DNA of 64,000 nt, from contig NW_026889774.1 in assembly GCF_033153115.1 (NCBI RefSeq), forward strand, positions 10,850,001-10,914,000, read 5' to 3'. Source of the DNA: Saccostrea echinata. Taxonomy: Eukaryota. Below the pieces are notes generated by a model. The model saw nothing but the letters and a program-made list of their open reading frames with translations, did not search any database and had not been told where the DNA came from. Positions 24,482 to 35,685 of this stretch are shown piece after piece (the first letter of the stretch is position 1; every line of letters begins with the position of its first letter). The translations under genes and the position numbers were made by a program.

Positions 24482-24819
24482 AAGAACTCAATCATTCCTA
24501 ATGCCTGAGTGTCAGATTTTTTTCTTTATTTCCTGTGCATGTCCTGAAAAAATGTGACTGACTATATTATTGAATTCACTTCAAAAATAACCCCAAAGAG
24601 ATAAGTTACAATGTGGTGATTACTCAAACATCAATATTATAGAACTTAAAAATAAATCAAAATGACGAGGAAATTCGAACTTACACTTTCTTGATTTAAT
24701 TTTGATCAAAATAGCGATTAAATATTTTCATTATCCAGTTCTTATAGATAAATTATTTAATTATTTAATAAAAGAATTTGTTATTAGTCATCAATGTTCA
24801 GTGTCAGTGCAAATTTCTA

Positions 24820-24950
24820 TCAATATTTACCTTCCCGATCTAGAAAAATTACTTTGGAACTCTTCTGTAAAGGAAATTAAATTATTAATTCAACATGGCG
24901 GAAAAAAGAAAAGCATAATTACAATAGAAACGTTATCCCTTGTGTTTGTA
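24820..24950. promoter_or_regulatory. Putative bidirectional promoter between GPS2 and CCDC84
   Basis: A minus-strand 5'UTR donor AAG|GTAAAT lies at 24831/24830, with a matching acceptor near 24047 just before the GPS2 ATG. The CCDC84 ATG is at 24951. A YY1-like AACATGGCGG motif is at 24892-24901. Confidence 0.6.
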
Positions 24951-27900
24951 ATGTTTAAACAGTTCCAGTATTGTTCTCTGTGTCGTTTCAGCCATAAAAA
25001 GAAGAGGAAACATATTTATTCCATCAGGCATCAAAATGTAGTTAATAATATATTGGAAAAGTATTTGAAAAAGGTAAAAAATTTACTGCTTGTGTCATGG
25101 AGGACAGTTAATCTCTCTTTGATATCTTTTTTAGTTCACCTAAGTTTCTCTGGTTACGGTTTCTCCATCGTCTGCTTTGTGTTTATTGTTTTTTGTCATT
25201 ACCTTTTTTGGTTTTCAACTTCTTGAGAAACTCTAAATCAATTTCACCATGTTGACCACAGACACTTGTTTCCTGTACAGGGCACCCCCTACTTATATTT
25301 CCCACAAGATACCTAACTCAATTTCAGGCAACTCACTTCAAGCCAGTATTCTTAGCAATTCATTAATCATTAACCAACTTCAATAAGACATAGTTCGCTT
25401 CTAGAGACTTTTTTTTTTCAAATATATCGTTCCAGACGTCCTTGGTCAAGCCTCTTTATTGTAAACCACTCGTTTACTCCTCGAAAATTACCTAACAACA
25501 TTTTAAGACTTTTCGACAGGATACATCAACTTCCAGTTATGGTTATAGTGTAGGATAAAACCAGAGACTTCCAAACTTTTCATTCTGAAGTCTCTGGTTT
25601 TATAATCAAGAGCTTTGACCAAGGACATTTTGGAACGATATATTTGAAAAGGAAAAAGTCCCTAGAAGTGAACTATGTCTTATTGAAGTAGGTTAATGAT
25701 TGATAAATTGATAAAATGCTGACTTGAAGTGGGGGTGCCTGAAATTGAGTTAAGTACCTAGTGGTAAAAATAAGTAAGGGGTGCCTTGTATACAAAACAA
25801 GTGCCTGTGATGTTGACCAATGGGGCGAGAGCAGTTGAGTATATAACTGGATACCTTTTCACCTGTAACTTAGATCCATCTCTCAATCGCACGAGGCAAA
25901 TGATAGTTGCATTTCCATAACATAGTCTTATATCAAAGAGCGTCTTATCTACTGTCTACATTTCCATTAAAGCAAGAATGAAGATGAATTTATTTACTTT
26001 TTGGTGATCATTTCTTTGGTGAAGAACATGAGCCAAAGAGCAGTACCACAGTTGTGAAAAAAACAGTGTATTTTGGGTAAAATTGTGGGGACCTGAGGTT
26101 AGGTCATTCCAAGTTTTTTCTCTGTTTAGCGTTCACCCATCTTTCAAAAACCTAGCTAGTACCTACCTATTTGTAAAAAACACACAAACCAAAAAATAAA
26201 ACAAAGAATTTATAATCATAAAAATGAGGTCAATCAAAGGATTTGATTTCATTAATCTGTTTTTCTCATAGAAAGATATATTCCATCTTTGCTAGCCAAG
26301 GGTTTCTGATACGCTACTCTCCTCATAAACCCTTGGCATACGGTGCTGACAAAAGATGGGATTGTTTTTGTCATGTGATCATGATTCTTACCAGGTACGA
26401 ACAGATTGCGTCATCGACAGAAATAAAAAGCGTATTTAAAAAAATTTTGTTTTTAAAGAATAATTAACAAGAAGGTATCGAGTTATGTTAATTTGTTATT
26501 TAAACATGTAAAAATGCAAATCTACATCTTCAGTATAGATTCTTAATCACATATTTTGCACGTAGCTTTAGATATTGGATGACACCATATAGCTATTCAT
26601 AGAATGGCATGTTATCTTACGGATCATTGTTTACTTGCATTTTACATTACCGATATTAAAGAGTCAAGATATATCCCGAACGCAAATATTGTCATTTACA
26701 AAAAACAATTGCTGATTGGTTGAATGATGTCGATCAACTCCAATCACAACTTGAGAAAAAAATCCCAACTTTTTTTAACACCGTATGCCAAGGGCTTATG
26801 AGGAGAGTAGCGTATCAGAAACCCTTGGCTAGCAAAGAATGATATATTCTGAAGCAAAATCAGGATATTAAATGCTTAAAGTGTACCTAACATGACATAT
26901 TGTAGACAAATATTTAGAGAAATTGACAGAATTCAAAGATTTTGACCAGAATAATCAGTTTTGGGACAGCCCCTTATCCCGCAGTCACCACCGGGTAGTG
27001 GGTCTATAGGATAATATCATTTTTAACAATTAACAGAAGGTTCTTTTTACAATCTGAGCACTAATGAACAATGTATAATGTCCCAGTTTACATACAGATG
27101 TTTGTAGGGGTGTGTTATAATATTAAACTTTAAATTTCATTTTTCTTATTTTAGATGACTGAAGCCAGGTCCTCTTTAGAATCTCCACAAATTCAAAGTT
27201 CACATTTTGAAAGAGGAGCCAAATTTTGGTGTCATTTTTGTGCAGAGGAATATCTAAAACACATGGAGCTTGACACGTGTACTGTTAAATATGGTGGTCT
27301 CCTAGAGCACATTGCAAGGTGTTTACAAATTATACATAACAGAAAATATTTCTAAAATAGATGTAGATTTGACCAGATAAGCAGCTGGTTATACAGGGTA
27401 CATATTTGGAATTCTGCAAGTATTAAAATATTTAGTTATTACTCAGCATGAGCAAAAGTGTGTTTTATCCAATACTGAGACACAGTGTAATGTCACTCTT
27501 GGACTAATACCTTGATTTTTGGCATTTTAGTTATTCAACATCTAAATATTTACACCTTTTAAATGCTACTTGTTGAGCTTCCAAAATTTGATTTGGTATC
27601 TAAGCACATATGATAGGATTATTAAACAGTTTTATGAATTTTAGATAAATAATTTGTTATTACAGTTTTGACCATAAGAGGAAAATGTACAATTTCTTCT
27701 ATGAGAACAAAGTGGATGAGAGCAAAAGACATCCAGATCTATTCCACATGCCAGAGGAGGATCTGAAGAAGTAATTGATAACACACATTTTCATTGGCTA
27801 AGATTTAATTGAGAAGCTTTTTAAAAAAATATGTTTCTCTGTGTATTTTGGACGTTGCAAAATAATCTCATAATGGGAAAATTTCATTGTGTTGTCAGAA

Positions 27901-28588
27901 TGAATATAAGAGCAAAACATGCCATATCAATCACTAGTTTCATGTACATGTATTTTTGTTAAAATCATGAGGGAGTCTAGAAAGCTCTTTTTATTATACA
28001 GTAAAACATGCTATAGTGAACACACTTATAATGAATTTACTCTTATAGTGAAGTGATTTTTGTTCCCCTTGGTTTTAAATACCGTATAAGCAGAAATTTA
28101 AGAAATTTAAGCAGAGGATTTAATTTTGGCATTATAAGCGAGCTAGGGTACTGAGATCGCTAGAATTGAATATCGCTAAAAATTAATTGCGTTTTATTTG
28201 TAATAGCTTCTTTAGTGAGCATGTTAAAATTGTTAAAATTACTTCTTGCTTAAAATAAAATACCAATTTTTAAGAACAAATCACTAAATTTGCGTCTCGC
28301 TAAAATTTCCACTTATACAGTAGTATTATGAACTTAACAGATATAACAAATTACATTTATAAGGGGAAAATTGGTCCATCCCTGGCACTTTGCCTCTAGT
28401 CTTAAATTACTCTAGTCTCATTGGTCAGTGAAAATTAAAAAAAAAGTATTTTCTCAGATAAAAAAAAAAAAAACAATCTGCAGGTTTCAAGAGAAAGTTG
28501 CCATTTATGCAAAGAAATATGATGCTGGAAGAAAGGAGAAAATAGAAAAGGTATTTGATTTTAAGAATGCATTTTTTGGTTATAATTA

Positions 28589-28631
<43 letters not shown>

Positions 28632-28687
28632 CATTTGGTCTGTAGTCCGTCTGTCCGTCCGTCCGTCTGTAAACTTTTCACATTTTT

Positions 28688-28718
<31 letters not shown>

Positions 28719-30463
28719 CGACCAAACTTGCCACAAAGTATCCTTGGGTGAAGGGGATTCAAGTTTGAACAAATAAAGGGCCACGCCCTCTTTCAAGGGG
28801 AGATAATAAAGAATTAGTGAAAAATTAATAGAATCATTTAAAAATCTTCTTCTCAAGAACCACAAAGCCAGGGAAGATGAAACTCATGTGGAAGGATCCT
28901 CAGGTAGTGTAGATTCAAATTTGTTCAAATCATGACCCCCGGGGGTAGGGCGGGGCCACAATGGAGGATCAAAGTTTTACATAGAAATATATAGGAAAAA
29001 CCTTTAAAAATCTTCTTCTCAAGAACAGCAAAGCCATGATGAGTCATATTTATATGGAAGCATCCTCAGGTAGTGTAGATTCAAGTTTGTTCAAATCCTG
29101 ACCCCCGGGGGTAGGGCAGGGCCACAATGGAGGATCAAAGTTTTACATAGAAATATAAAGGAAAAACCTTTAAAAATCTTCTTCTCAAGAACAGCAAAGC
29201 CATGATGAGTCATATTTATATGGAAGCATCCTCAGGTAGTGTAGATTCAAGTTTGTTCAAATCCTGACCCCCGGGGGTAGGGCAGGGCCACAATGGAGGA
29301 TCAAAGTTTTACATAGAAATATATAGGAAAAATCTTTAAAAATCTTTTTCTCAATAACAGCAAAGCCCAAATTGGTCATATTTATATGAAAGCATCCTCA
29401 GGTAGTGTAGATTCAAGTTTGTTCAAATCATGACCCCTGGGGGTAGGGCGGGGCCACAATGGAGGATCAAAGTTTTACATAGAAATATATAAGAAAAATC
29501 TTTAAAAATCTTCTTCTCAAGAACAGCAAAGCCATGATGAGTCATATTTATTTGGAAGCATCCTCAGGTAGTGTAGATTCAAGTTTGTTCAAATCATGTC
29601 CCCCGGGGGTGGGGCGGGGCCACAATGGAGGATCAAAGTTTTACATAGAAATATATAGGAAAAATCTTTAAAAATCTTTTTCTCAATAACAGCAAAGCCC
29701 AAATTGGTCATATTTATATGAAAGCATCCTCAGATAGTGTAGATTCAAATTTATTCAAATCCTGACCCCCAGGGGTAGGGCAGGGCCACAATGGAGGATA
29801 AAAGTTTTACATAGAAATATATAAGAAAAATCTTTAAAAATCTTCTTCTCAGGAACAGCAAAGTCCTGATTGATCATATTTAAATGGAAGTATCCTCAGG
29901 TAGTGTAGATTCAAGTTTGTTCAAATCATGACCCCCTGGGGTAGGGTGGGGCCACAAAGGAGGATCAAAGTCTGAAATAGAAATGTATAGGAATATATCT
30001 TCTGATGAAGAACTGCAAAGCCATGATTAGTCATTTTGATATGGAAGCATCCTCAGGTAGTGTAGATTCAAGTTTGTTAAAATGATGACCACAGGGGATA
30101 GGGATGGGGCATAATGGGGGATCGAAAATTTTACATAGGAACATATAGGAAAATATCTTCTTCTCAAGAACTGAAAATCATGTTTAGTCATTTTGATATG
30201 GAAGCATCCTCAGGTAGTGTAGATTCAAGTTTGTTCAAATGATAACCCCTGGGATAGGGAGGAGCCACAATGGGGGATCAAATTTTTACAAAGGAATATA
30301 TGGGAAATTTTTTTTTAAAATCTTCTCAAGTACAACAAAGCCATTTGTTATATTGACATGGAAGCATCATCAGGTAGTTTAAAATTCAAGCCCCCCCCCC
30401 CCCCCCCCCCCCTTGTAATCTTTTCAATACTGAACTGATTTGTGCTTTTGCCTTGCCAATGTG

Positions 30464-30499
<36 letters not shown>

Positions 30500-31677
30500 A
30501 ATTTTTACCTTCACTGCAATGTTTATTTGATGCAAAAACTTTTGTTTTTAAATCAAGAAGGTAGATTCATTTATATTAAATTTCCCATTTTTTTTTCCAG
30601 ACAGCAATCCGAATAAAAATCACAGAGGCTGTTAGGAAACAAATGGTGCAGTCGCAGCAGTTGTCCATGGTGCAGGTGTGTGGGGCCTGAATCGTATCCA
30701 TAAAATCAGGGTTAATTCTATGTCAGGGTCATGGGTGTCTTTTGTTGAGGTATTCCCATCTATGGCCAACATTGTCATGTAAACCTACATATGGAGTCTG
30801 AATCAATTTTGATGACTGGAATCAGTCAACTAAGCTTTAAGTAAAAAAAGTATAGTATTGTTGTGTTTCATCTCATTTATTCACTTGAATAAGAACCATA
30901 TAGCCTGTTCATTTAACAAGAGTTGAATTGCCCTCTCTTATGAATTAGAATAATAATCAGTGGTTTATAAATGTATCACCTGAAGTAAAATTTTTAATCA
31001 GTTTGTAGGAAAGTTGTGAGACAGAGGAAAAAATTCTTTTCTAAATGTATACCGGGTACTTCAATGTATTTTAATAGGGAAAAAAAATCCTTGTAGCTTT
31101 TGATAGCAACTTTGAACCAGATCCAATAAAAAATCCCCCCCCCCCTTGTCCAATTTTCTTAGCAGTGAGGGTGTTTCTTATGCCAAGTATGGTACCTTAT
31201 TTCTTGTTTCTGATACTTTGATCTACATTTTGTCACACTCATTTTCTGACAGGAATTTAAAATGTGTGTTGTCATCAGGAGAAATTTAATACCTGAGCAT
31301 CATTGGTCAATGTTTCACTCACTCACTCATAACAAAATCATGTATTAATCATTATAATTAGAGCTATGCATCAGAAACTGTCAATAAAAGTAACCATATG
31401 AGCCAGTTTAATCTCAGAATAGATATTAAAAAAATACCGTAGACTTAGAAATCGGAAAAAAAACTACAGGAGTTGGCAAACCTACATTGTGTAATGTTAT
31501 CAGTTACATTACTGGTAATATTTTCAATAAATGAAATACTATGATTTCTCCCTATTTAAAGTCCCCAATAAGTAAAGTAATACATGTACCATGTAATTAA
31601 ACAAAAAATTAAAAACCTTGAATGAAATGTTTCACATGTAAAAGTGGATGTACATGTAAATCAAAGGTGGACATAGT

Positions 31678-31708
<31 letters not shown>

Positions 31709-34700
31709 GGGAGCTTCATATATCTAGACAACCCCTAGGATATTTGGTATAAAATTAATTTGTGATATACATGTACAACATGGCTTTGGAACAAAGTCAA
31801 CAAACAACCAACTTCTTCCTTAAATTTTCAATGTATACATTATTTATATGAAATAGAAAACAAATTTCCTGTGTGAAATCCTATCTCTAGTCTACTGCCT
31901 ATTAATATTTTATCAAATATTGTTTTTCTAGCCATTTTTAGTTTGCTTTAAAACTTCCATGCTGGAGACATCAGAAATAGAATGCAATGAAAAGTAAACA
32001 GTATTTCACAGTGTATGAGAAATTAATATTTTTAGAAATTCCTTGTGCATAGCTCTAGTCTTAATGATTGCTAATTATGAACCATTTGCACATTTAATTA
32101 TAATCTGTTCCTGAACAAAACTACAGCCCCAGATTATTGAAAATACAACTCCTGAAAGAAGAAATGTTTTGAATTACGTAAGTCCTGGGACAGTTCTAGA
32201 GAAGAAAGCAACATTGCTAGCCAAAGGTGATGGACTGACATTTATTGGTAGTCATGTGAGTAGCTTTATACTTATGATAATCAGTTTAGAATATCTAGAA
32301 AATTAAGCATGACATAATTCATGAGAATTTAAAGAGGACACTTTTTCTGTGTTTGAGTGCACCATGCACACAGAATAATGTAAAAATAAATAGCAGTTTT
32401 TATGAAATAAAATGCCTTGTGTATTTATATTTTGTAATTTGTACTGTATATGCAGGTGTACAACAGTAAAGAGGGCAACATTCACTCAGGAGCCCCTCCT
32501 CCCTGGCTGTTGTCCTCAAATGAGGAGTCTACCAATAATGAGATAGGTCCTACTGAGGAAACTTTTAAGGCTCACTGTAAGTAACTGAATTTGTAGTATT
32601 CATCTGTCCTTTTTCTAGATGTATCATAGATTCTTTTGTGAATCTTCTTTGTGTTTTTATGTTTAATTTTACGATTCATTTCAATGATTGCTAGTTTTTC
32701 AGAATCAATGAGTTTTTTCATGTCACTTTTGTTAATATTAACTAATATATTGAAAATATATTTTGGTTACTTCCTAAGCAGAAGACATTTTGAAATGAAA
32801 TTTCTTATAGTAAAGTAACTTACACTGTTTTTCAGTTCTCTAAACAATTAATTGTCTATACTTACAAACTGCATAAAACATTTTAGAGAAATTATGAAAT
32901 AAACTTGTATTACCTCAGTCATATATTACATGTGCTGTAGCACAATTTCATAGCCAAATATAGTTTTGTTTTTTTTTTTTTTTTAGTGGAGAGGGAAAAG
33001 AAAAAGAAACTTCCTGCGAACAGAGTGGGTGCCAATTTTGATCACCAGCAGAACACAGATCAGTCATGGCTTCCATCCTTTGGGAGGGTGTGGAGTAAAG
33101 GGGGCAGGCAGCAGTCAAAGTATGTCATTGTCCAAAGGCTGGCTAGTTTGAAATATTTGATGATGCAGAAGCCTTGTTTAAAGATTTTTAGCTCTACTGG
33201 TCAGAGACCAGTAGAACTTATGTGATAGTAAGGTATCTGTCATCCATCTCTCCATCTGTAAACAATTTTTCTAAATTTTAATTTTCCTACAGTTTTGGTC
33301 TGATTTCAATATAACTTGGCACACAAGTAGACTACACTAAGGTTCATAATTCTGTATTTTGGTTTTTTGATTTCAATGAACGGTATTGCCATGGTTATTA
33401 AAAATAGAAATTTCAGTGAAATGCTTTCAAAATGCTACTCCTCCTGCAGTTTTGGTCTGATTTCAATATAACTTGGCACACAAGTAGACTACACTTAGAT
33501 ACATACTGTAATTCTGTTTTATCATTTTTTTGATTTTGATGAATGGTGTTGCCATAGTTACTGATACTAAAAATAGAAATTTCTGTGAAATACATTCAGA
33601 ATGCTACTCCTACTACAATTTTGGTATGATTTCAATGAATGGAGTTGCCGTGGTTAGTATAAATAGAAAATACTCTAAAATTCTTTCAAAAGGCTACTCT
33701 CCTACAGTTTTAGTCGGATTGCAATGAATCTTGTCACAAAAAGAGACTAAACCAAGGATCATTATTCTGTTTATTGCTGCTGCAAAGTTTCAAGTCCAAG
33801 TGCTACTTTTCTCTTCCTTTGTTATAAGTACAAACCAGTAGAGCTTCAGTCTTGTCAGAGACTTCTGGTTTTGTATTAGCAATGTAGTAATCCTTCACTG
33901 AGATCATTTATTTGGAAACTAGTTAGTTTTAAGGGTATATAAATAAATAATCAATGCATAATTATTTTAATATATTTACGGTGACACCGTTGTGGCAAGC
34001 GCAGTTGTGTACCATAAAAAAAAGCTTACATAGCTTACACTTTAAATTTTGATCCGCCTCTTCAAACTTCAAAACTGCACAAGACAGTCTAGACTGTGAC
34101 ATCACATGACGTATGTAAGTTGTATTTCCGTAACTGAGTCAAAATAGGCCTTTTGCAGTTTTGTAACAAAAGGTATTGTAGAGTACCGGTAGATGCAATT
34201 ATTATTTGTTTCGTTTAAGCTTTCTGCAAGAACTAAATCTTAATACTTGATATTTGTGGTACTGTTTATTCACCATTATCGCTTGGAATCATTGTAGCGA
34301 AGGAATTCTGGGAAGGTTTCATAGAAAAATTTGCTTGATGAATATACAGATTTTATTTCGAATTTTCTCTGTTCTTACATGTTAGTCTATTGAGCTCACT
34401 GTGCTTGCTATAAGAAAAATTCATGTGTGCAAATTTCAAATTTAGAAATTTCATTTAACAGTGCATAGCACTTTGCACTATGCCAAAAGGAATACATTTC
34501 TAGAAAATAAAGTTAATTCATGTACATGCATGGAGTTCGAGATAACGAGGTTTGACTCTATATGGGAACTGTATTTTGGTACTTTAACTATGGAAAAATT
34601 ATTTGCAGAAAGTATTTCCAAAGACAACATTCTACAAAGAAGATTTCACCTAGTTCAACATATCAGGCAACTAGTTCAAGAGAAACTGGTTCCTCCAGTT

Positions 34701-35221
34701 TGACAAATAATACTGCAAATGACCTGCATTTAGCAACAGACAGTATAGTTAATTTCAATGGTGAATATCCTTTTCATTCTAACATTGACACCAACTCCTC
34801 AAACATTTCACAAGTGGCCCTGAATGTGGAAAATCCAGTTAGTGACTTTTCAGGATTTCAGCTGGACCAGAGTGGAGTTATGGGGTCAGATGCAAGTTTT
34901 TCATATGTTCCTGGAAATGTAAAACCATATGTGAAAAAACATAGGATTGAAAATTCAACATCACTCAGTGAAGTTGTTGGGTATGCAGAGCACCATGTAT
35001 TTGAATCATTTCAACATCAGAATCAGACTGGTGTTGAAAATGCATTTGTGAACCATTCGTCTATATCAAGAAATGTGAAACCCTACGTTAGAAAACGACA
35101 TGTGGAAGAAGCAGGGTCATCTCATTCACAACTTGTAGATTTCATTCCTATGATACCAACACCAATTTTGGATGCTCAATCACATCCGGCAAATTCCAAA
35201 CTAAAGAAAAGAGCAGGATGA
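24951..35221 (+). CDS. CCDC84: Centrosomal AT-AC splicing factor (CENATAC/CCDC84), minor spliceosome component
   Basis: Exons: 24951-25073, 27155-27318, 27666-27770, 28484-28550, 30601-30675, 32127-32255, 32456-32576, 32987-33119, 34609-35221, all phase-consistent. Two N-terminal zinc fingers (CSLC..HIYSIRH; [18 protein letters not shown]) and the C-terminal motifs [25 protein letters not shown] and WLPSFGRVW are typical of CCDC84. Confidence 0.94.
25257..25809. mobile_element. Foldback MITE with ~190-bp arms and an 8-bp TSD
   Basis: Ends CACAGACACTTGTTT and AAACAAGTGCCTGTG. Perfect TSD ATGTTGAC at 25249-25256 and 25810-25817. Confidence 0.9.
26284..26841. mobile_element. MITE with ~60-bp TIRs and an 8-bp TSD
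   Basis: CATCTTTGCTAGCCAAGGGTTTCTGATACGCTACTCTCCTCATAA..., with its reverse complement at 26778-26841. TSD ATATATTC on both sides. Confidence 0.92.
27997..28386. mobile_element. Tc1/pogo-like MITE remnant with a nested MITE (28080-28322)
   Basis: Outer start TACAGTAAAACATGCTATAGTGAAC. Inner TIRs TACCGTATAAGCAGAAATTT and AAATTTCCACTTATACAGTA, with TA ends. Confidence 0.55.
28590..30497 (+). mobile_element. Complete HINE (Helentron-associated, pearl/CvA-like) carrying ~9-10 Cg170/HindIII-type satellite monomers, in CCDC84 intron 4
   Basis: 5' TAGCTCACCTGAGCCGAAGGCTCAAGTGAGCT (subTIR + IR), a (GTCC/GTCT)n microsatellite and ~165-bp tandem monomers. The 3' end has CTCAGGTGAGCG plus the palindrome GGCCCATGGGCC and CTCTTGTT. 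T-rich insertion site. Confidence 0.93.
30676..30701 (+). promoter_or_regulatory. Competing U2-type (GTGTGT, 30676) and U12-type (GTATCCAT, 30694) 5' splice sites of CCDC84 intron 5
   Basis: The 18-nt extension GTG TGT GGG GCC TGA ATC contains an in-frame stop. A U12-like branch point TTCCTGAAC is at 32108-32116, 10 nt before the exon start at 32127. Confidence 0.7.
33188..33870 (+). mobile_element. HINE-like element of a second family with ~160-bp internal repeats, in CCDC84 intron 8
   Basis: 5' TTAGCTCTACTGGTCAGAGACCAGTAGAACT, (TCCA)-like microsatellite and repeated CAGTTTTGGTCTGATTTCAATATAACTTGGCACACAAG units. The 3' end has CCAGTAGAGC plus the hairpin AGTCTTGTCAGAGACT and CTGGTT. Confidence 0.75.
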
Positions 35222-35685
35222 ATTTTGTGTTTGGTTACGTATTGTTTGTAAACTTGTTTTCTGACTTATTATAAAAACATATTTAGTAAACACTTTTTCT
35301 TTAATAGAAAATTTTAATTAAAACATGAACACATTGTACAAATTGCTCAAGAAATGTATAATGATTTTTGTATAAAGGTTATGTACAAAAGTTTCAACAA
35401 CAACAAAAAACTGGATTATAAAAATGCAAATTTTTCAAAGCACTAAGATTACATGTGTATTTTGCAAATTTCAATGAATAATAAACATTTTTCTGCTGGA
35501 AAAGAAGTTGTAATAGACCTTTCAAAATGGATATGGAGATTGTCAAGATGCATGTATAGAGTATTTTGAAGGAGGGGGGAAGGGGGGGGGGGGTAATGTT
35601 TACTAGGTATGGATTATTGGTTAACTGAAATGACTTCATGTACACACAATTGAATAGAAATTAGATTGCCTCTATAATGGAAGTG

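What the first reader, a model, noticed from the sequence alone, without database searches (positions are those of the whole stretch)
30661..32130. Minor-spliceosome poison switch in oyster CENATAC: competing U2 and U12 5' splice sites sharing one acceptor
Seen in sequence: the productive donor CAG|GTGTGT (30675/30676) is a weak U2 site, and GTATCCAT lies 18 nt downstream (30694; U12 consensus GTATCCTT). The 18 nt between them read V-C-G-A-STOP in frame, so U12 splicing would give a premature stop with several junctions downstream, i.e. an NMD target. The acceptor at 32125-32126 has no polypyrimidine tract but has TTCCTGAAC (U12 branch consensus TTCCTTRAC) about 10 nt upstream, the usual U12 spacing. 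Established: CENATAC is a minor-spliceosome factor, and minor-spliceosome proteins such as 48K and 65K are feedback-regulated by unproductive splicing. I recall competing major/minor donors being reported for animal CENATAC, so the concept is not new. Inference: this mollusc keeps the full circuit as a twintron-like intron in which high U12 activity lowers CENATAC mRNA.
Basis: partly seen in the sequence, partly recalled or inferred. Interest (0 to 1): 0.8.

Follow-up and report, generated by a model that had tools for sequence, protein, structure and literature searches.

The report
Oyster CENATAC poison splice-site switch
Intron 5 of the oyster gene for the minor-spliceosome protein CENATAC has a normal donor site and, 18 bases further on, a minor-spliceosome donor whose use adds a stop codon; this is real, but the same self-limiting switch is already described for human and other animal CENATAC.

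Summary
Every motif is at the stated coordinate. The gene is the single-copy CENATAC/CCDC84 orthologue of Saccostrea echinata (RefSeq XP_061184879.1 matches the window's exons).

Main results:
- A spliced RNA-derived contig from a public run joins 30693 directly to 32127. That is the junction predicted for the U12-type donor GTATCCAT and the acceptor at 32125-6, and it carries the in-frame TGA.
- The productive U2 junction (30675^32127) appears only in RefSeq models of two Saccostrea species. It was not in any assembled contig of the four runs laid.
- The Crassostrea gigas RefSeq protein is the truncated form and ends in the same VCGA-stop tail.
- The genome has U11, U12 and U6atac snRNA genes.
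- Orthologous loci in metagenome contigs (clam-like, coral, worm-like) keep a U2 donor, a GTATCC donor 13-40 nt downstream and a TCCTRAAY branch site next to an AG at or just upstream of the exon 6 start.

Competing U2/U12 donors with a shared acceptor and a premature stop are published for human CENATAC intron 5 and described as conserved in animals (Cologne 2019; de Wolf 2021; Akinyi & Frilander 2021). This locus is therefore a new member of a known circuit. Feedback and NMD sensitivity remain inferred. Interest is low.

The parts
24951..35221 (+). CENATAC (CCDC84) orthologue of Saccostrea echinata. Nine coding exons: 24951-25073, 27155-27318, 27666-27770, 28484-28550, 30601-30675, 32127-32255, 32456-32576, 32987-33119, 34609-35221 (stop included).
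   Evidence: Pfam PF14968 matches exons 1, 2, 7 and 8 in colinear order. tblastn of XP_061184879.1 (P0068) matches at about 100%. Exons 5-9 are confirmed by spliced contigs. Exon 1-4 boundaries were read from sequence. The gene is single-copy in the genome.
30601..30675 (+). Exon 5, productive form (75 nt, phase 0 at both ends).
   Evidence: The RefSeq protein reads ...QQLSMVQ|PQIIEN across the junction.
30673..30681 (+). U2-type 5' splice site CAG|GTGTGT (cut after 30675).
   Evidence: Sequence. The junction is used in RefSeq models of S. echinata and S. cucullata. A GTNTGT donor recurs at this position in coral and worm-like loci.
30676..30693 (+). 18-nt poison extension kept when the U12 donor is used. 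It reads V C G A stop, with TGA at 30688-30690.
   Evidence: It is present in RNA contig X5 record 21, which lies on 30599-30693 and continues at 32127. The same VCGA-stop tail ends C. gigas XP_011449772.1.
30694..30701 (+). U12-type (GT-AG subtype) 5' splice site GTATCCAT. It has A at +7 where the consensus has T.
   Evidence: The junction 30693^32127 is. GTATCCAT or GTATCCAA is at the same place in clam-like and worm-like loci, and GTATCCTC in coral.
30676..32126 (+). Intron 5: 1451 nt as a U2-type intron, 1433 nt (30694-32126) as a U12-type intron. One acceptor serves both.
   Evidence: Low-depth contigs also show intron retention: X2 record 7 lies on 30673-30933, and X3 record 17 keeps 32041-32126 although introns 6 and 7 are spliced.
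32108..32116 (+). U12-type branch-point sequence TTCCTGAAC (branch A at 32114 or 32115).
   Evidence: It pairs with the GUAAGGAA box of this genome's own U12 snRNA with one G.A mismatch (the pairing register is from my knowledge). TCCTGAAY or TTCCTAAAC is at the orthologous place in other phyla.
32125..32126 (+). Shared 3' splice site AG, 11-12 nt from the branch A, with no pyrimidine tract.
   Evidence: The RefSeq model starts exon 6 at 32127.
32127..32255 (+). Exon 6 (129 nt).
   Evidence: Contigs X5 record 21 and X3 record 17, and the joint 32255^32456.

Best explanation
This is the oyster (Saccostrea echinata) copy of the known CENATAC self-limiting splice switch. Exon 5 can be cut by the major spliceosome at CAG|GTGTGT or by the minor spliceosome 18 nt downstream at GTATCCAT. 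Both donors join the same acceptor, whose only upstream signal is a U12-type branch site 11-12 nt away.

The major-spliceosome product encodes the full protein, including the conserved C-terminal motifs. The minor-spliceosome product keeps 18 extra bases that contain an in-frame TGA. It can only encode a 182-residue protein with the two zinc fingers, and four exon junctions lie downstream of the stop.

CENATAC is itself a minor-spliceosome (U4atac/U6atac.U5) protein. More minor-spliceosome activity should therefore divert more pre-mRNA into the unproductive form, which is negative feedback.

Shown here: the anatomy, use of the U12 junction in RNA, presence of the minor snRNA genes, and conservation.

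Inferred by homology with the human data: dependence on the minor spliceosome, the feedback, and decay of the PTC form.
For: - Motifs and frame.
- Gene identity: Pfam PF14968 on exons 1, 2, 7 and 8; P0068 = XP_061184879.1, 'centrosomal AT-AC splicing factor-like [Saccostrea echinata]', matches the window's exons.
- RNA: contig X5 record 21 (1178 nt, depth 28) lies on 30599-30693 | 32127-32255 | 32456-32576 | 33013-33119 | 34609-34837. It uses the U12 donor and four further GT..AG introns. There is no retrocopy in the genome that could mimic this.
- Partly spliced contigs that retain parts of intron 5 fit slow U12-type splicing.
- Productive junction: the S. echinata and S. cucullata RefSeq proteins read SMVQ|PQII.
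- C. gigas XP_011449772.1 is 182 aa and ends ...LTLKVCGA. This is the same tail, although exon 5 itself is only about 40% identical.
- U12, U11 and U6atac genes score above the Rfam cut-offs in this genome.
- Conservation: clam-like L019 and L024, coral L076 (with the coral RNA-like contigs L010 and L026 carrying the extension joined to exon 6) and about ten worm-like contigs all keep GTATCC a short way after the exon 5 donor. They also keep TCCTRAAY with an AG 8-12 nt further on, at or just upstream of the exon 6 start.
- Literature: human CCDC84 intron 5 has competing U12 and U2 donors and a shared acceptor. The U12 form carries a PTC, and the balance shifts to U2 when U4atac is defective (PMC6800510; PMC8329584). 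The arrangement is described as conserved in animals and as autoregulatory (PMC8280824).
Against: - No assembled contig in the four runs laid shows the U2 junction 30675^32127. The depth figures leave no room for one, so the productive junction rests on RefSeq models and on the need for the conserved C-terminal exons to be translated.
- The runs are only guessed to be RNA. They are contigs, not reads, so no isoform ratio can be given.
- The 5' splice site has A at +7 and the branch site has G at position 5. Both weaken pairing with U11/U6atac and U12.
- Nothing here tests minor-spliceosome dependence, NMD or feedback.
- The PTC form seems abundant, which is not what efficient NMD would leave.
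Confidence: 0.8

Rival explanations
1. The truncated product is the point, not a poison. The U12 form is a stable, translated mRNA for a 182-residue zinc-finger-only CENATAC isoform with its own function, for instance as a competitor on the tri-snRNP. The switch would then set an isoform ratio rather than an mRNA level.
For: - The +18 form is the only one assembled in run X5.
- It is the form RefSeq chose for C. gigas.
- In Crassostrea, Logan clusters of 257 and 130 members hold ORFs that start at a Met inside exon 6, as expected downstream of a stop.
- The VCGA tail is identical between two oyster genera.
- In human controls the PTC form is about 65% of transcripts (PMC6800510).
Against: - The tails differ in length and sequence between phyla: VCGA, VCFVQALTAG, VCLRKAG, or a frameshift in clam-like loci. 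This fits selection on splice signals and a stop rather than on a peptide.
- No protein evidence exists.
- Contig abundance is not a measure of stability.
Confidence: 0.12
2. It is an evolutionary relic without regulatory use. A U12-type intron is being converted to U2-type, and both donors are still usable.
For: Nested U2/U12 introns have been proposed as conversion intermediates (PMC8329584).
Against: - The two-donor arrangement is kept in cnidarian, mollusc and worm-like loci, and in vertebrates. That is far too long for a transient intermediate.
- The U12 route gives a premature stop in every lineage looked at.
- The host gene is a minor-spliceosome component.
Confidence: 0.05
3. GTATCC is just an alternative U2-type donor used by the major spliceosome, and the minor spliceosome plays no part.
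For: The intron has GT-AG ends. No experiment here separates the two machineries.
Against: - GTATCC matches the U1 consensus poorly at +4 to +6.
- The acceptor has no pyrimidine tract.
- It has a U12 branch motif at the 11-12 nt spacing typical of U12 introns.
- The motif pair is conserved across phyla.
- In human cells the orthologous junction drops when U4atac is mutated.
Confidence: 0.03

Closest known systems
[quoted passage not shown] 2019, PMC6800510; de Wolf et al. 2021, PMC8280824; Akinyi & Frilander 2021, PMC8329584)
   Same: - Orthologous gene, and the fifth intron.
- The U2 donor lies upstream of the U12 donor.
- One acceptor is preceded by a U12 branch site that must also serve the major spliceosome.
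- The U12 route gives a premature stop and the U2 route gives the full protein.
- The PTC form is abundant at steady state.
   Different: - The species and the details differ: 18-nt spacing with the stop inside the extension, A at +7 of the U12 donor and G at branch-site position 5.
- I did not compare these details with the human sequence.
- The functional response to minor-spliceosome defects is shown only in human cells.
USSE-mediated feedback of U11-48K (SNRNP48) and U11/U12-65K (RNPC3) (Verbeeren et al. 2010, cited in PMC8280824 and PMC3584512)
   Same: A minor-spliceosome protein gene carries U12-type 5' splice-site sequence, and recognition of it by the minor machinery yields unproductive mRNA. 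The feedback logic is conserved over long distances.
   Different: - In the USSE case, tandem U12 5'ss-like repeats bind U11 without being spliced and activate an upstream U2-type 3' splice site.
- Here a single GTATCC is itself spliced as the donor of a complete U12-type intron.
Nested U2/U12 introns (twintrons) such as Drosophila prospero and human SRSF10 (PMC8329584)
   Same: Major and minor spliceosomes compete for one intron, with different mRNA outcomes.
   Different: - In prospero and SRSF10 the U2 intron lies inside an AT-AC U12 intron, with separate sites at both ends.
- In the oyster the U12 intron (GT-AG) lies inside the U2 intron and shares its acceptor.

Membership tests
CENATAC competing U2/U12 donor autoregulatory circuit | The host gene is the CENATAC/CCDC84 orthologue. 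| tested here: met
   PF14968 matches exons 1, 2, 7 and 8 colinearly. The RefSeq name and an approximately 100% match of XP_061184879.1 agree. The gene is single-copy.
CENATAC competing U2/U12 donor autoregulatory circuit | A U2-type donor is followed closely by a U12-type donor at the end of the same exon. | tested here: met
   CAG|GTGTGT at 30675/6 and GTATCCAT at 30694, 18 nt apart.
CENATAC competing U2/U12 donor autoregulatory circuit | A shared 3' splice site is preceded by a U12-type branch site. | tested here: met
   TTCCTGAAC at 32108-32116 and AG at 32125-6. The U12-form contig and the RefSeq U2-form model both start exon 6 at 32127.
CENATAC competing U2/U12 donor autoregulatory circuit | Use of the U12 donor introduces a premature stop. 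| tested here: met
   In-frame TGA at 30688-30690. The stop lies in the RNA contig that carries the U12 junction.
CENATAC competing U2/U12 donor autoregulatory circuit | Both junctions are used in vivo. | tested here: inconclusive
   The U12 junction is seen in a spliced contig. The U2 junction appears only in RefSeq models of two Saccostrea species and in none of the four runs laid.
CENATAC competing U2/U12 donor autoregulatory circuit | Same intron position as in human (intron 5). | tested here: inconclusive
   It is the fifth intron, lying between the zinc-finger half and the C-terminal motifs. Papers give intron 5 for human. No alignment to the human gene was made.
CENATAC competing U2/U12 donor autoregulatory circuit | Phylogenetic conservation of both donors. 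| tested here: met
   - The C. gigas protein has the same VCGA-stop tail.
- Clam-like L019 and L024, coral L076, L010 and L026, and the worm-like contigs keep both donors.
- L019's U2 donor is only inferred from the reading frame.
CENATAC competing U2/U12 donor autoregulatory circuit | The isoform ratio shifts toward U2 when the minor spliceosome is impaired; the PTC form is NMD-sensitive. | not testable with these tools
   This needs a perturbation experiment. It is shown only for human cells.
U12-type intron, GT-AG subtype | 5' splice site RTATCCTT. | tested here: met
   GTATCCAT matches 7 of 8 positions, with the invariant RTATCC core intact.
U12-type intron, GT-AG subtype | Branch site TTCCTTRAY at 11-13 nt from the 3' splice site, with no pyrimidine tract. 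| tested here: met
   TTCCTGAAC matches 8 of 9 positions. The branch A lies 11-12 nt from the intron end, followed by AAAACTAC. The optimum distance is quoted in PMC3584512.
U12-type intron, GT-AG subtype | The organism has a minor spliceosome. | tested here: met
   U12 (129.5 bits), U11 (98.4 bits) and U6atac (92.1 bits) genes are present in G000, all above their gathering scores.
USSE (U11 snRNP-binding splicing enhancer) regulation | Tandem U12 5'ss-like repeats that activate an upstream U2-type 3' splice site. | tested here: not met
   Only one GTATCC lies at this site in the oyster. It is used as a donor, not as an enhancer.

The most novel reading that the evidence does not exclude
The departures from consensus may be selected rather than tolerated. 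A purine at branch-site position 5 is found in every lineage sampled (oyster, clam-like, coral, worm-like). A at +7 of the U12 donor is found in the lophotrochozoan loci. Together they would keep the poison intron in the class of inefficiently spliced minor introns that de Wolf et al. found to need CENATAC most. The loop would then sense CENATAC (tri-snRNP) dosage itself rather than bulk U11/U12 activity. The abundant 182-residue zinc-finger-only product may add a second, protein-level layer.
Probability: 0.2. Interest if true: 0.45.

Novelty: new member of a known kind. Interest (0 to 1): 0.2.

Why it matters
- It confirms with sequence, RNA-contig and comparative evidence that the CENATAC feedback switch exists in a bivalve. 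Together with the coral contigs, this supports the published statement that it is ancient in animals.
- Genome annotation of oysters is affected. The C. gigas RefSeq protein used here is the truncated PTC form, and the S. echinata model has a doubtful N-terminal extension.
- The locus gives a ready read-out of minor-spliceosome activity in oyster RNA-seq: the ratio of 30693^32127 to 30675^32127.
- It opens no new question for the field.

Tried and rejected
Orthologous genomic loci of named molluscs (Crassostrea, Mercenaria, Mya, Haliotis and others) could not be fetched. Unnamed metagenome contigs were used instead, so their taxon labels (clam-like, coral, worm-like) are my inference from best protein matches.
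- The Appendix of de Wolf et al. (Fig S9A) is not held as text. I could not see which species they showed.
- A search with the 182-aa C. gigas protein returned only genomic ORF fragments of exons 1 and 2 and no further truncated isoforms.
- Read laying offered only assembled contigs.
- The spliced model of this gene was searched exon by exon only. The step of searching my own joined model was left out. Full-length comparisons used database proteins returned by the tools.
- I considered a processed pseudogene as the source of the spliced contig. This was rejected because all nine exon matches in the genome lie in this window.
- I considered GTATCCTT at 28738 in intron 4 as a second U12 donor. 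It lies in a repeat-rich stretch of intron 4 and has no support in the contigs, so I take it as chance.
- No splice-site scoring program (intronIC, MaxEnt) was available. Strength statements are consensus counts and pairing registers from my knowledge.
Full report
**1. The observation**

- Exon 5 ends ...ATG GTG CAG at 30675 and is followed by GTGTGT.
- GTATCCAT starts at 30694.
- The 18 bases between are GTG TGT GGG GCC TGA ATC.
- TTCCTGAAC occupies 32108-32116.
- The acceptor AG is at 32125-32126, preceded by AAAACTAC, so there is no pyrimidine tract.

The exon frame was fixed by building the gene model and by tblastn of the database protein. Exon 5 is 30601-30675 in phase 0, so the extension reads V-C-G-A-stop. 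The branch adenosine is 11-12 nt from the intron end, within the 11-13 nt optimum quoted for U12-type introns (PMC3584512).

The two 8-9 nt motifs are each about as frequent in the window as chance predicts: 6 found against 4 expected, and 3 against 2.8. Their placement at the two ends of one intron, at the right distances, has a chance probability near 1e-7 by my arithmetic.

One correction: by consensus, CAG|GTGTGT is a fairly good U2-type donor and not a weak one. This is my knowledge of U1 pairing and was not scored.

**2. What the gene is**

Pfam PF14968 (CCDC84) matches four exons in colinear order:
- exon 1: profile positions 1-35
- exon 2: 37-89
- exon 7: 238-273
- exon 8: 278-319

A search with exon 2 alone and then with a returned full-length protein found P0068 = XP_061184879.1, 'centrosomal AT-AC splicing factor-like [Saccostrea echinata]'. 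It aligns to the window's nine exons at about 100%, so the window is from that oyster. The whole genome (923 Mb) holds only this copy and no retrocopy. It also holds U12, U11 and U6atac snRNA genes well above the Rfam cut-offs.

Full-length comparisons used proteins that the tools returned.

**3. RNA evidence**

Runs were found with 30450-35300. Their contigs were laid on the same stretch. In run X5 a 1178-nt contig at depth 28 lies on these pieces, which are contiguous in the contig:
- 30599-30693
- 32127-32255
- 32456-32576
- (32987) 33013-33119
- 34609-34837

It therefore joins 30693 to 32127, which is exactly the junction predicted for the U12 donor and the shared acceptor, and it contains the TGA. 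The other three introns it removes have GT..AG ends, and there is no retrocopy, so it comes from spliced RNA.

The depth figures for the bin covering exon 5 are fully accounted for by this contig in X5 and by one intronic contig in X2. Contigs drop minor variants, so this shows only that the +18 form is not the rare one.

Two low-depth contigs show retention of intron 5. X2 record 7 lies on 30673-30933. X3 record 17 keeps 32041-32126 while introns 6 and 7 are already removed. This is the usual behaviour of slowly spliced U12-type introns.

**4. Evidence for the productive junction**

- The RefSeq proteins of S. echinata and S. cucullata read ...SMVQ|PQII....
- Any use of the GTATCC donor includes the TGA.
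- Exons 7 and 8 carry the most conserved CENATAC motifs (39.5 and 68.4 bits; invariant columns). A stop-free mRNA must therefore exist.
- The only in-frame donor upstream of the TGA is the GT at 30676.

**5. Conservation**

Crassostrea:
- XP_011449772.1 of Crassostrea gigas is 182 residues long and ends ...FLTLKVCGA. RefSeq annotated the truncated form there.
- Its four-residue tail plus stop is identical to that of Saccostrea, although the 25 residues of exon 5 before it are only about 40% identical.
- Two Logan clusters with 257 and 130 members hold ORFs that begin at a methionine inside exon 6. This is expected if the transcripts carry an upstream stop. I cannot exclude full-length members among those that were not listed.

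Clam-like contigs (best matches Mya and Mercenaria):
- L024 has TCT|GTCAGT, then 13 nt, then GTATCCAA. It has TCCTGAAT, 8 nt and AG directly before an exon 6 that aligns with Mya.
- L019 has GTATCCAA at 1716. It has TCCTGAAT, 8 nt and AG directly before exon 6 at 2121.

Coral contigs:
- The genomic contig L076 has CAG|GTCTGT, then 40 nt with an in-frame TAA, then GTATCCTC. It has TCCTGAAT, 12 nt and AG before exon 6.
- L010 and L026 carry the extension joined directly to exon 6. That is the U12 form in RNA-like contigs.

Worm-like contigs (about ten):
- They have AAAAYG|GTTTGT, then 21 nt, then GTATCCAT.
- They have TCCTGAAC or TTCCTAAAC at the 3' end.

Position 5 of the branch motif is a purine in every lineage and never the consensus T. 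The lophotrochozoan donors share A at +7.

By the standard pairing registers (my knowledge), applied to this genome's own snRNAs, both changes remove one base pair. The branch-site change affects pairing with U12. The donor change affects pairing with U11 and U6atac.

**6. Mechanism**

Shown:
- two donors and one acceptor
- U12-type signals
- the stop in the extension
- use of the U12 junction in RNA
- intron retention
- the minor snRNA genes
- deep conservation

Inferred from the human orthologue:
- The +18 junction needs the minor spliceosome. In human U4atac-mutant cells the balance moves from about 65/35 to about 15/85 in favour of the U2 donor (PMC6800510).
- This gives negative feedback on a protein of the U4atac/U6atac.U5 tri-snRNP (PMC8280824).

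NMD of the +18 form is plausible. Four junctions and more than 380 nt of exon sequence lie between the stop and the last junction. It is untested, and the apparent abundance of the form argues that decay is at best partial.

**7. Comparison with what is known, and novelty**

The architecture matches the one published for human CENATAC intron 5. It has competing U2 and U12 donors, a shared acceptor whose U12 branch site must also serve the major spliceosome, and a PTC from the minor pathway. Those authors state that both donors are phylogenetically highly conserved in animals.

It differs from the USSE mechanism of 48K/65K, in which unspliced tandem U12 donor repeats act as an enhancer. It also differs from the prospero and SRSF10 twintrons, in which a U2 intron lies inside an AT-AC U12 intron.

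No paper in the library treats CENATAC in molluscs. The oyster locus is a new member of a known kind, not a new mechanism.

**8. Verdict**

It is not novel in concept.
- Interest: 0.2.
- Confidence that this is the orthologous switch and that the U12 route yields the PTC mRNA: 0.8.

Noticed in passing
L054, L063, L079, L080, L059, L068, L045, L032, L081 (e.g. L054:100-175 and 1105-1160): - In the worm-like metagenome contigs the CENATAC U12 donor motif is duplicated: GGTTTGTCACT-GTATCCAT, then again GGTTTGTCACT-GTATCCAC 33 nt later. L045 has three copies of a longer unit.
- The first AG after the branch site lies about 25-31 nt upstream of the in-frame start of exon 6, with a TAG in between.
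- The U12 intron there seems nested inside the U2 intron at both ends.
- The tandem donors recall the USSE of 48K/65K.
   Followed up: partly
L010:1120-1260, L026:40-210, L076:370-500 and 1660-1790: Coral contigs show the same switch: CAG|GTCTGT, an in-frame TAA, GTATCCTC and TCCTGAAT. Two RNA-like contigs carry the U12-spliced form, and one of them (L026) still holds other introns.
   Followed up: partly
window 24789-24950: The RefSeq model XP_061184879.1 starts 60 codons upstream of the conserved MFKQFQYC start that S. cucullata and C. gigas use (ATG at 24951). The N-terminal extension is probably an annotation artefact.
   Followed up: no
window 28832-30390: A tandem array of a 166-bp unit fills most of intron 4 of CENATAC (9.5 copies, 86% matches). 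Each unit has an open frame reading [38 protein letters not shown].
   Followed up: partly
window 30450-30611 and 33042-34013: Two intronic stretches collect contig depths in the thousands to tens of thousands in all four runs, with many loose ends and internal joints. They are high-copy repeats (transposon-like) that are abundant in those runs. 33287-33636 also holds a 169-bp tandem duplication.
   Followed up: no
window 32131-32132: A second AG lies 6 nt (in frame) after the acceptor used (CCCCAG). The contig and the RefSeq models use the first AG. A minus-two-residue variant is possible.
   Followed up: no
window 28738-28745: A perfect GTATCCTT lies on the + strand in a repeat-rich stretch of intron 4, 188 nt after the exon 4 donor. 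No contig supports its use, so it is probably chance.
   Followed up: no
window 44527-44673: This is the only run of N in the window (147 bases). It is far from the feature and was left untouched.
   Followed up: no
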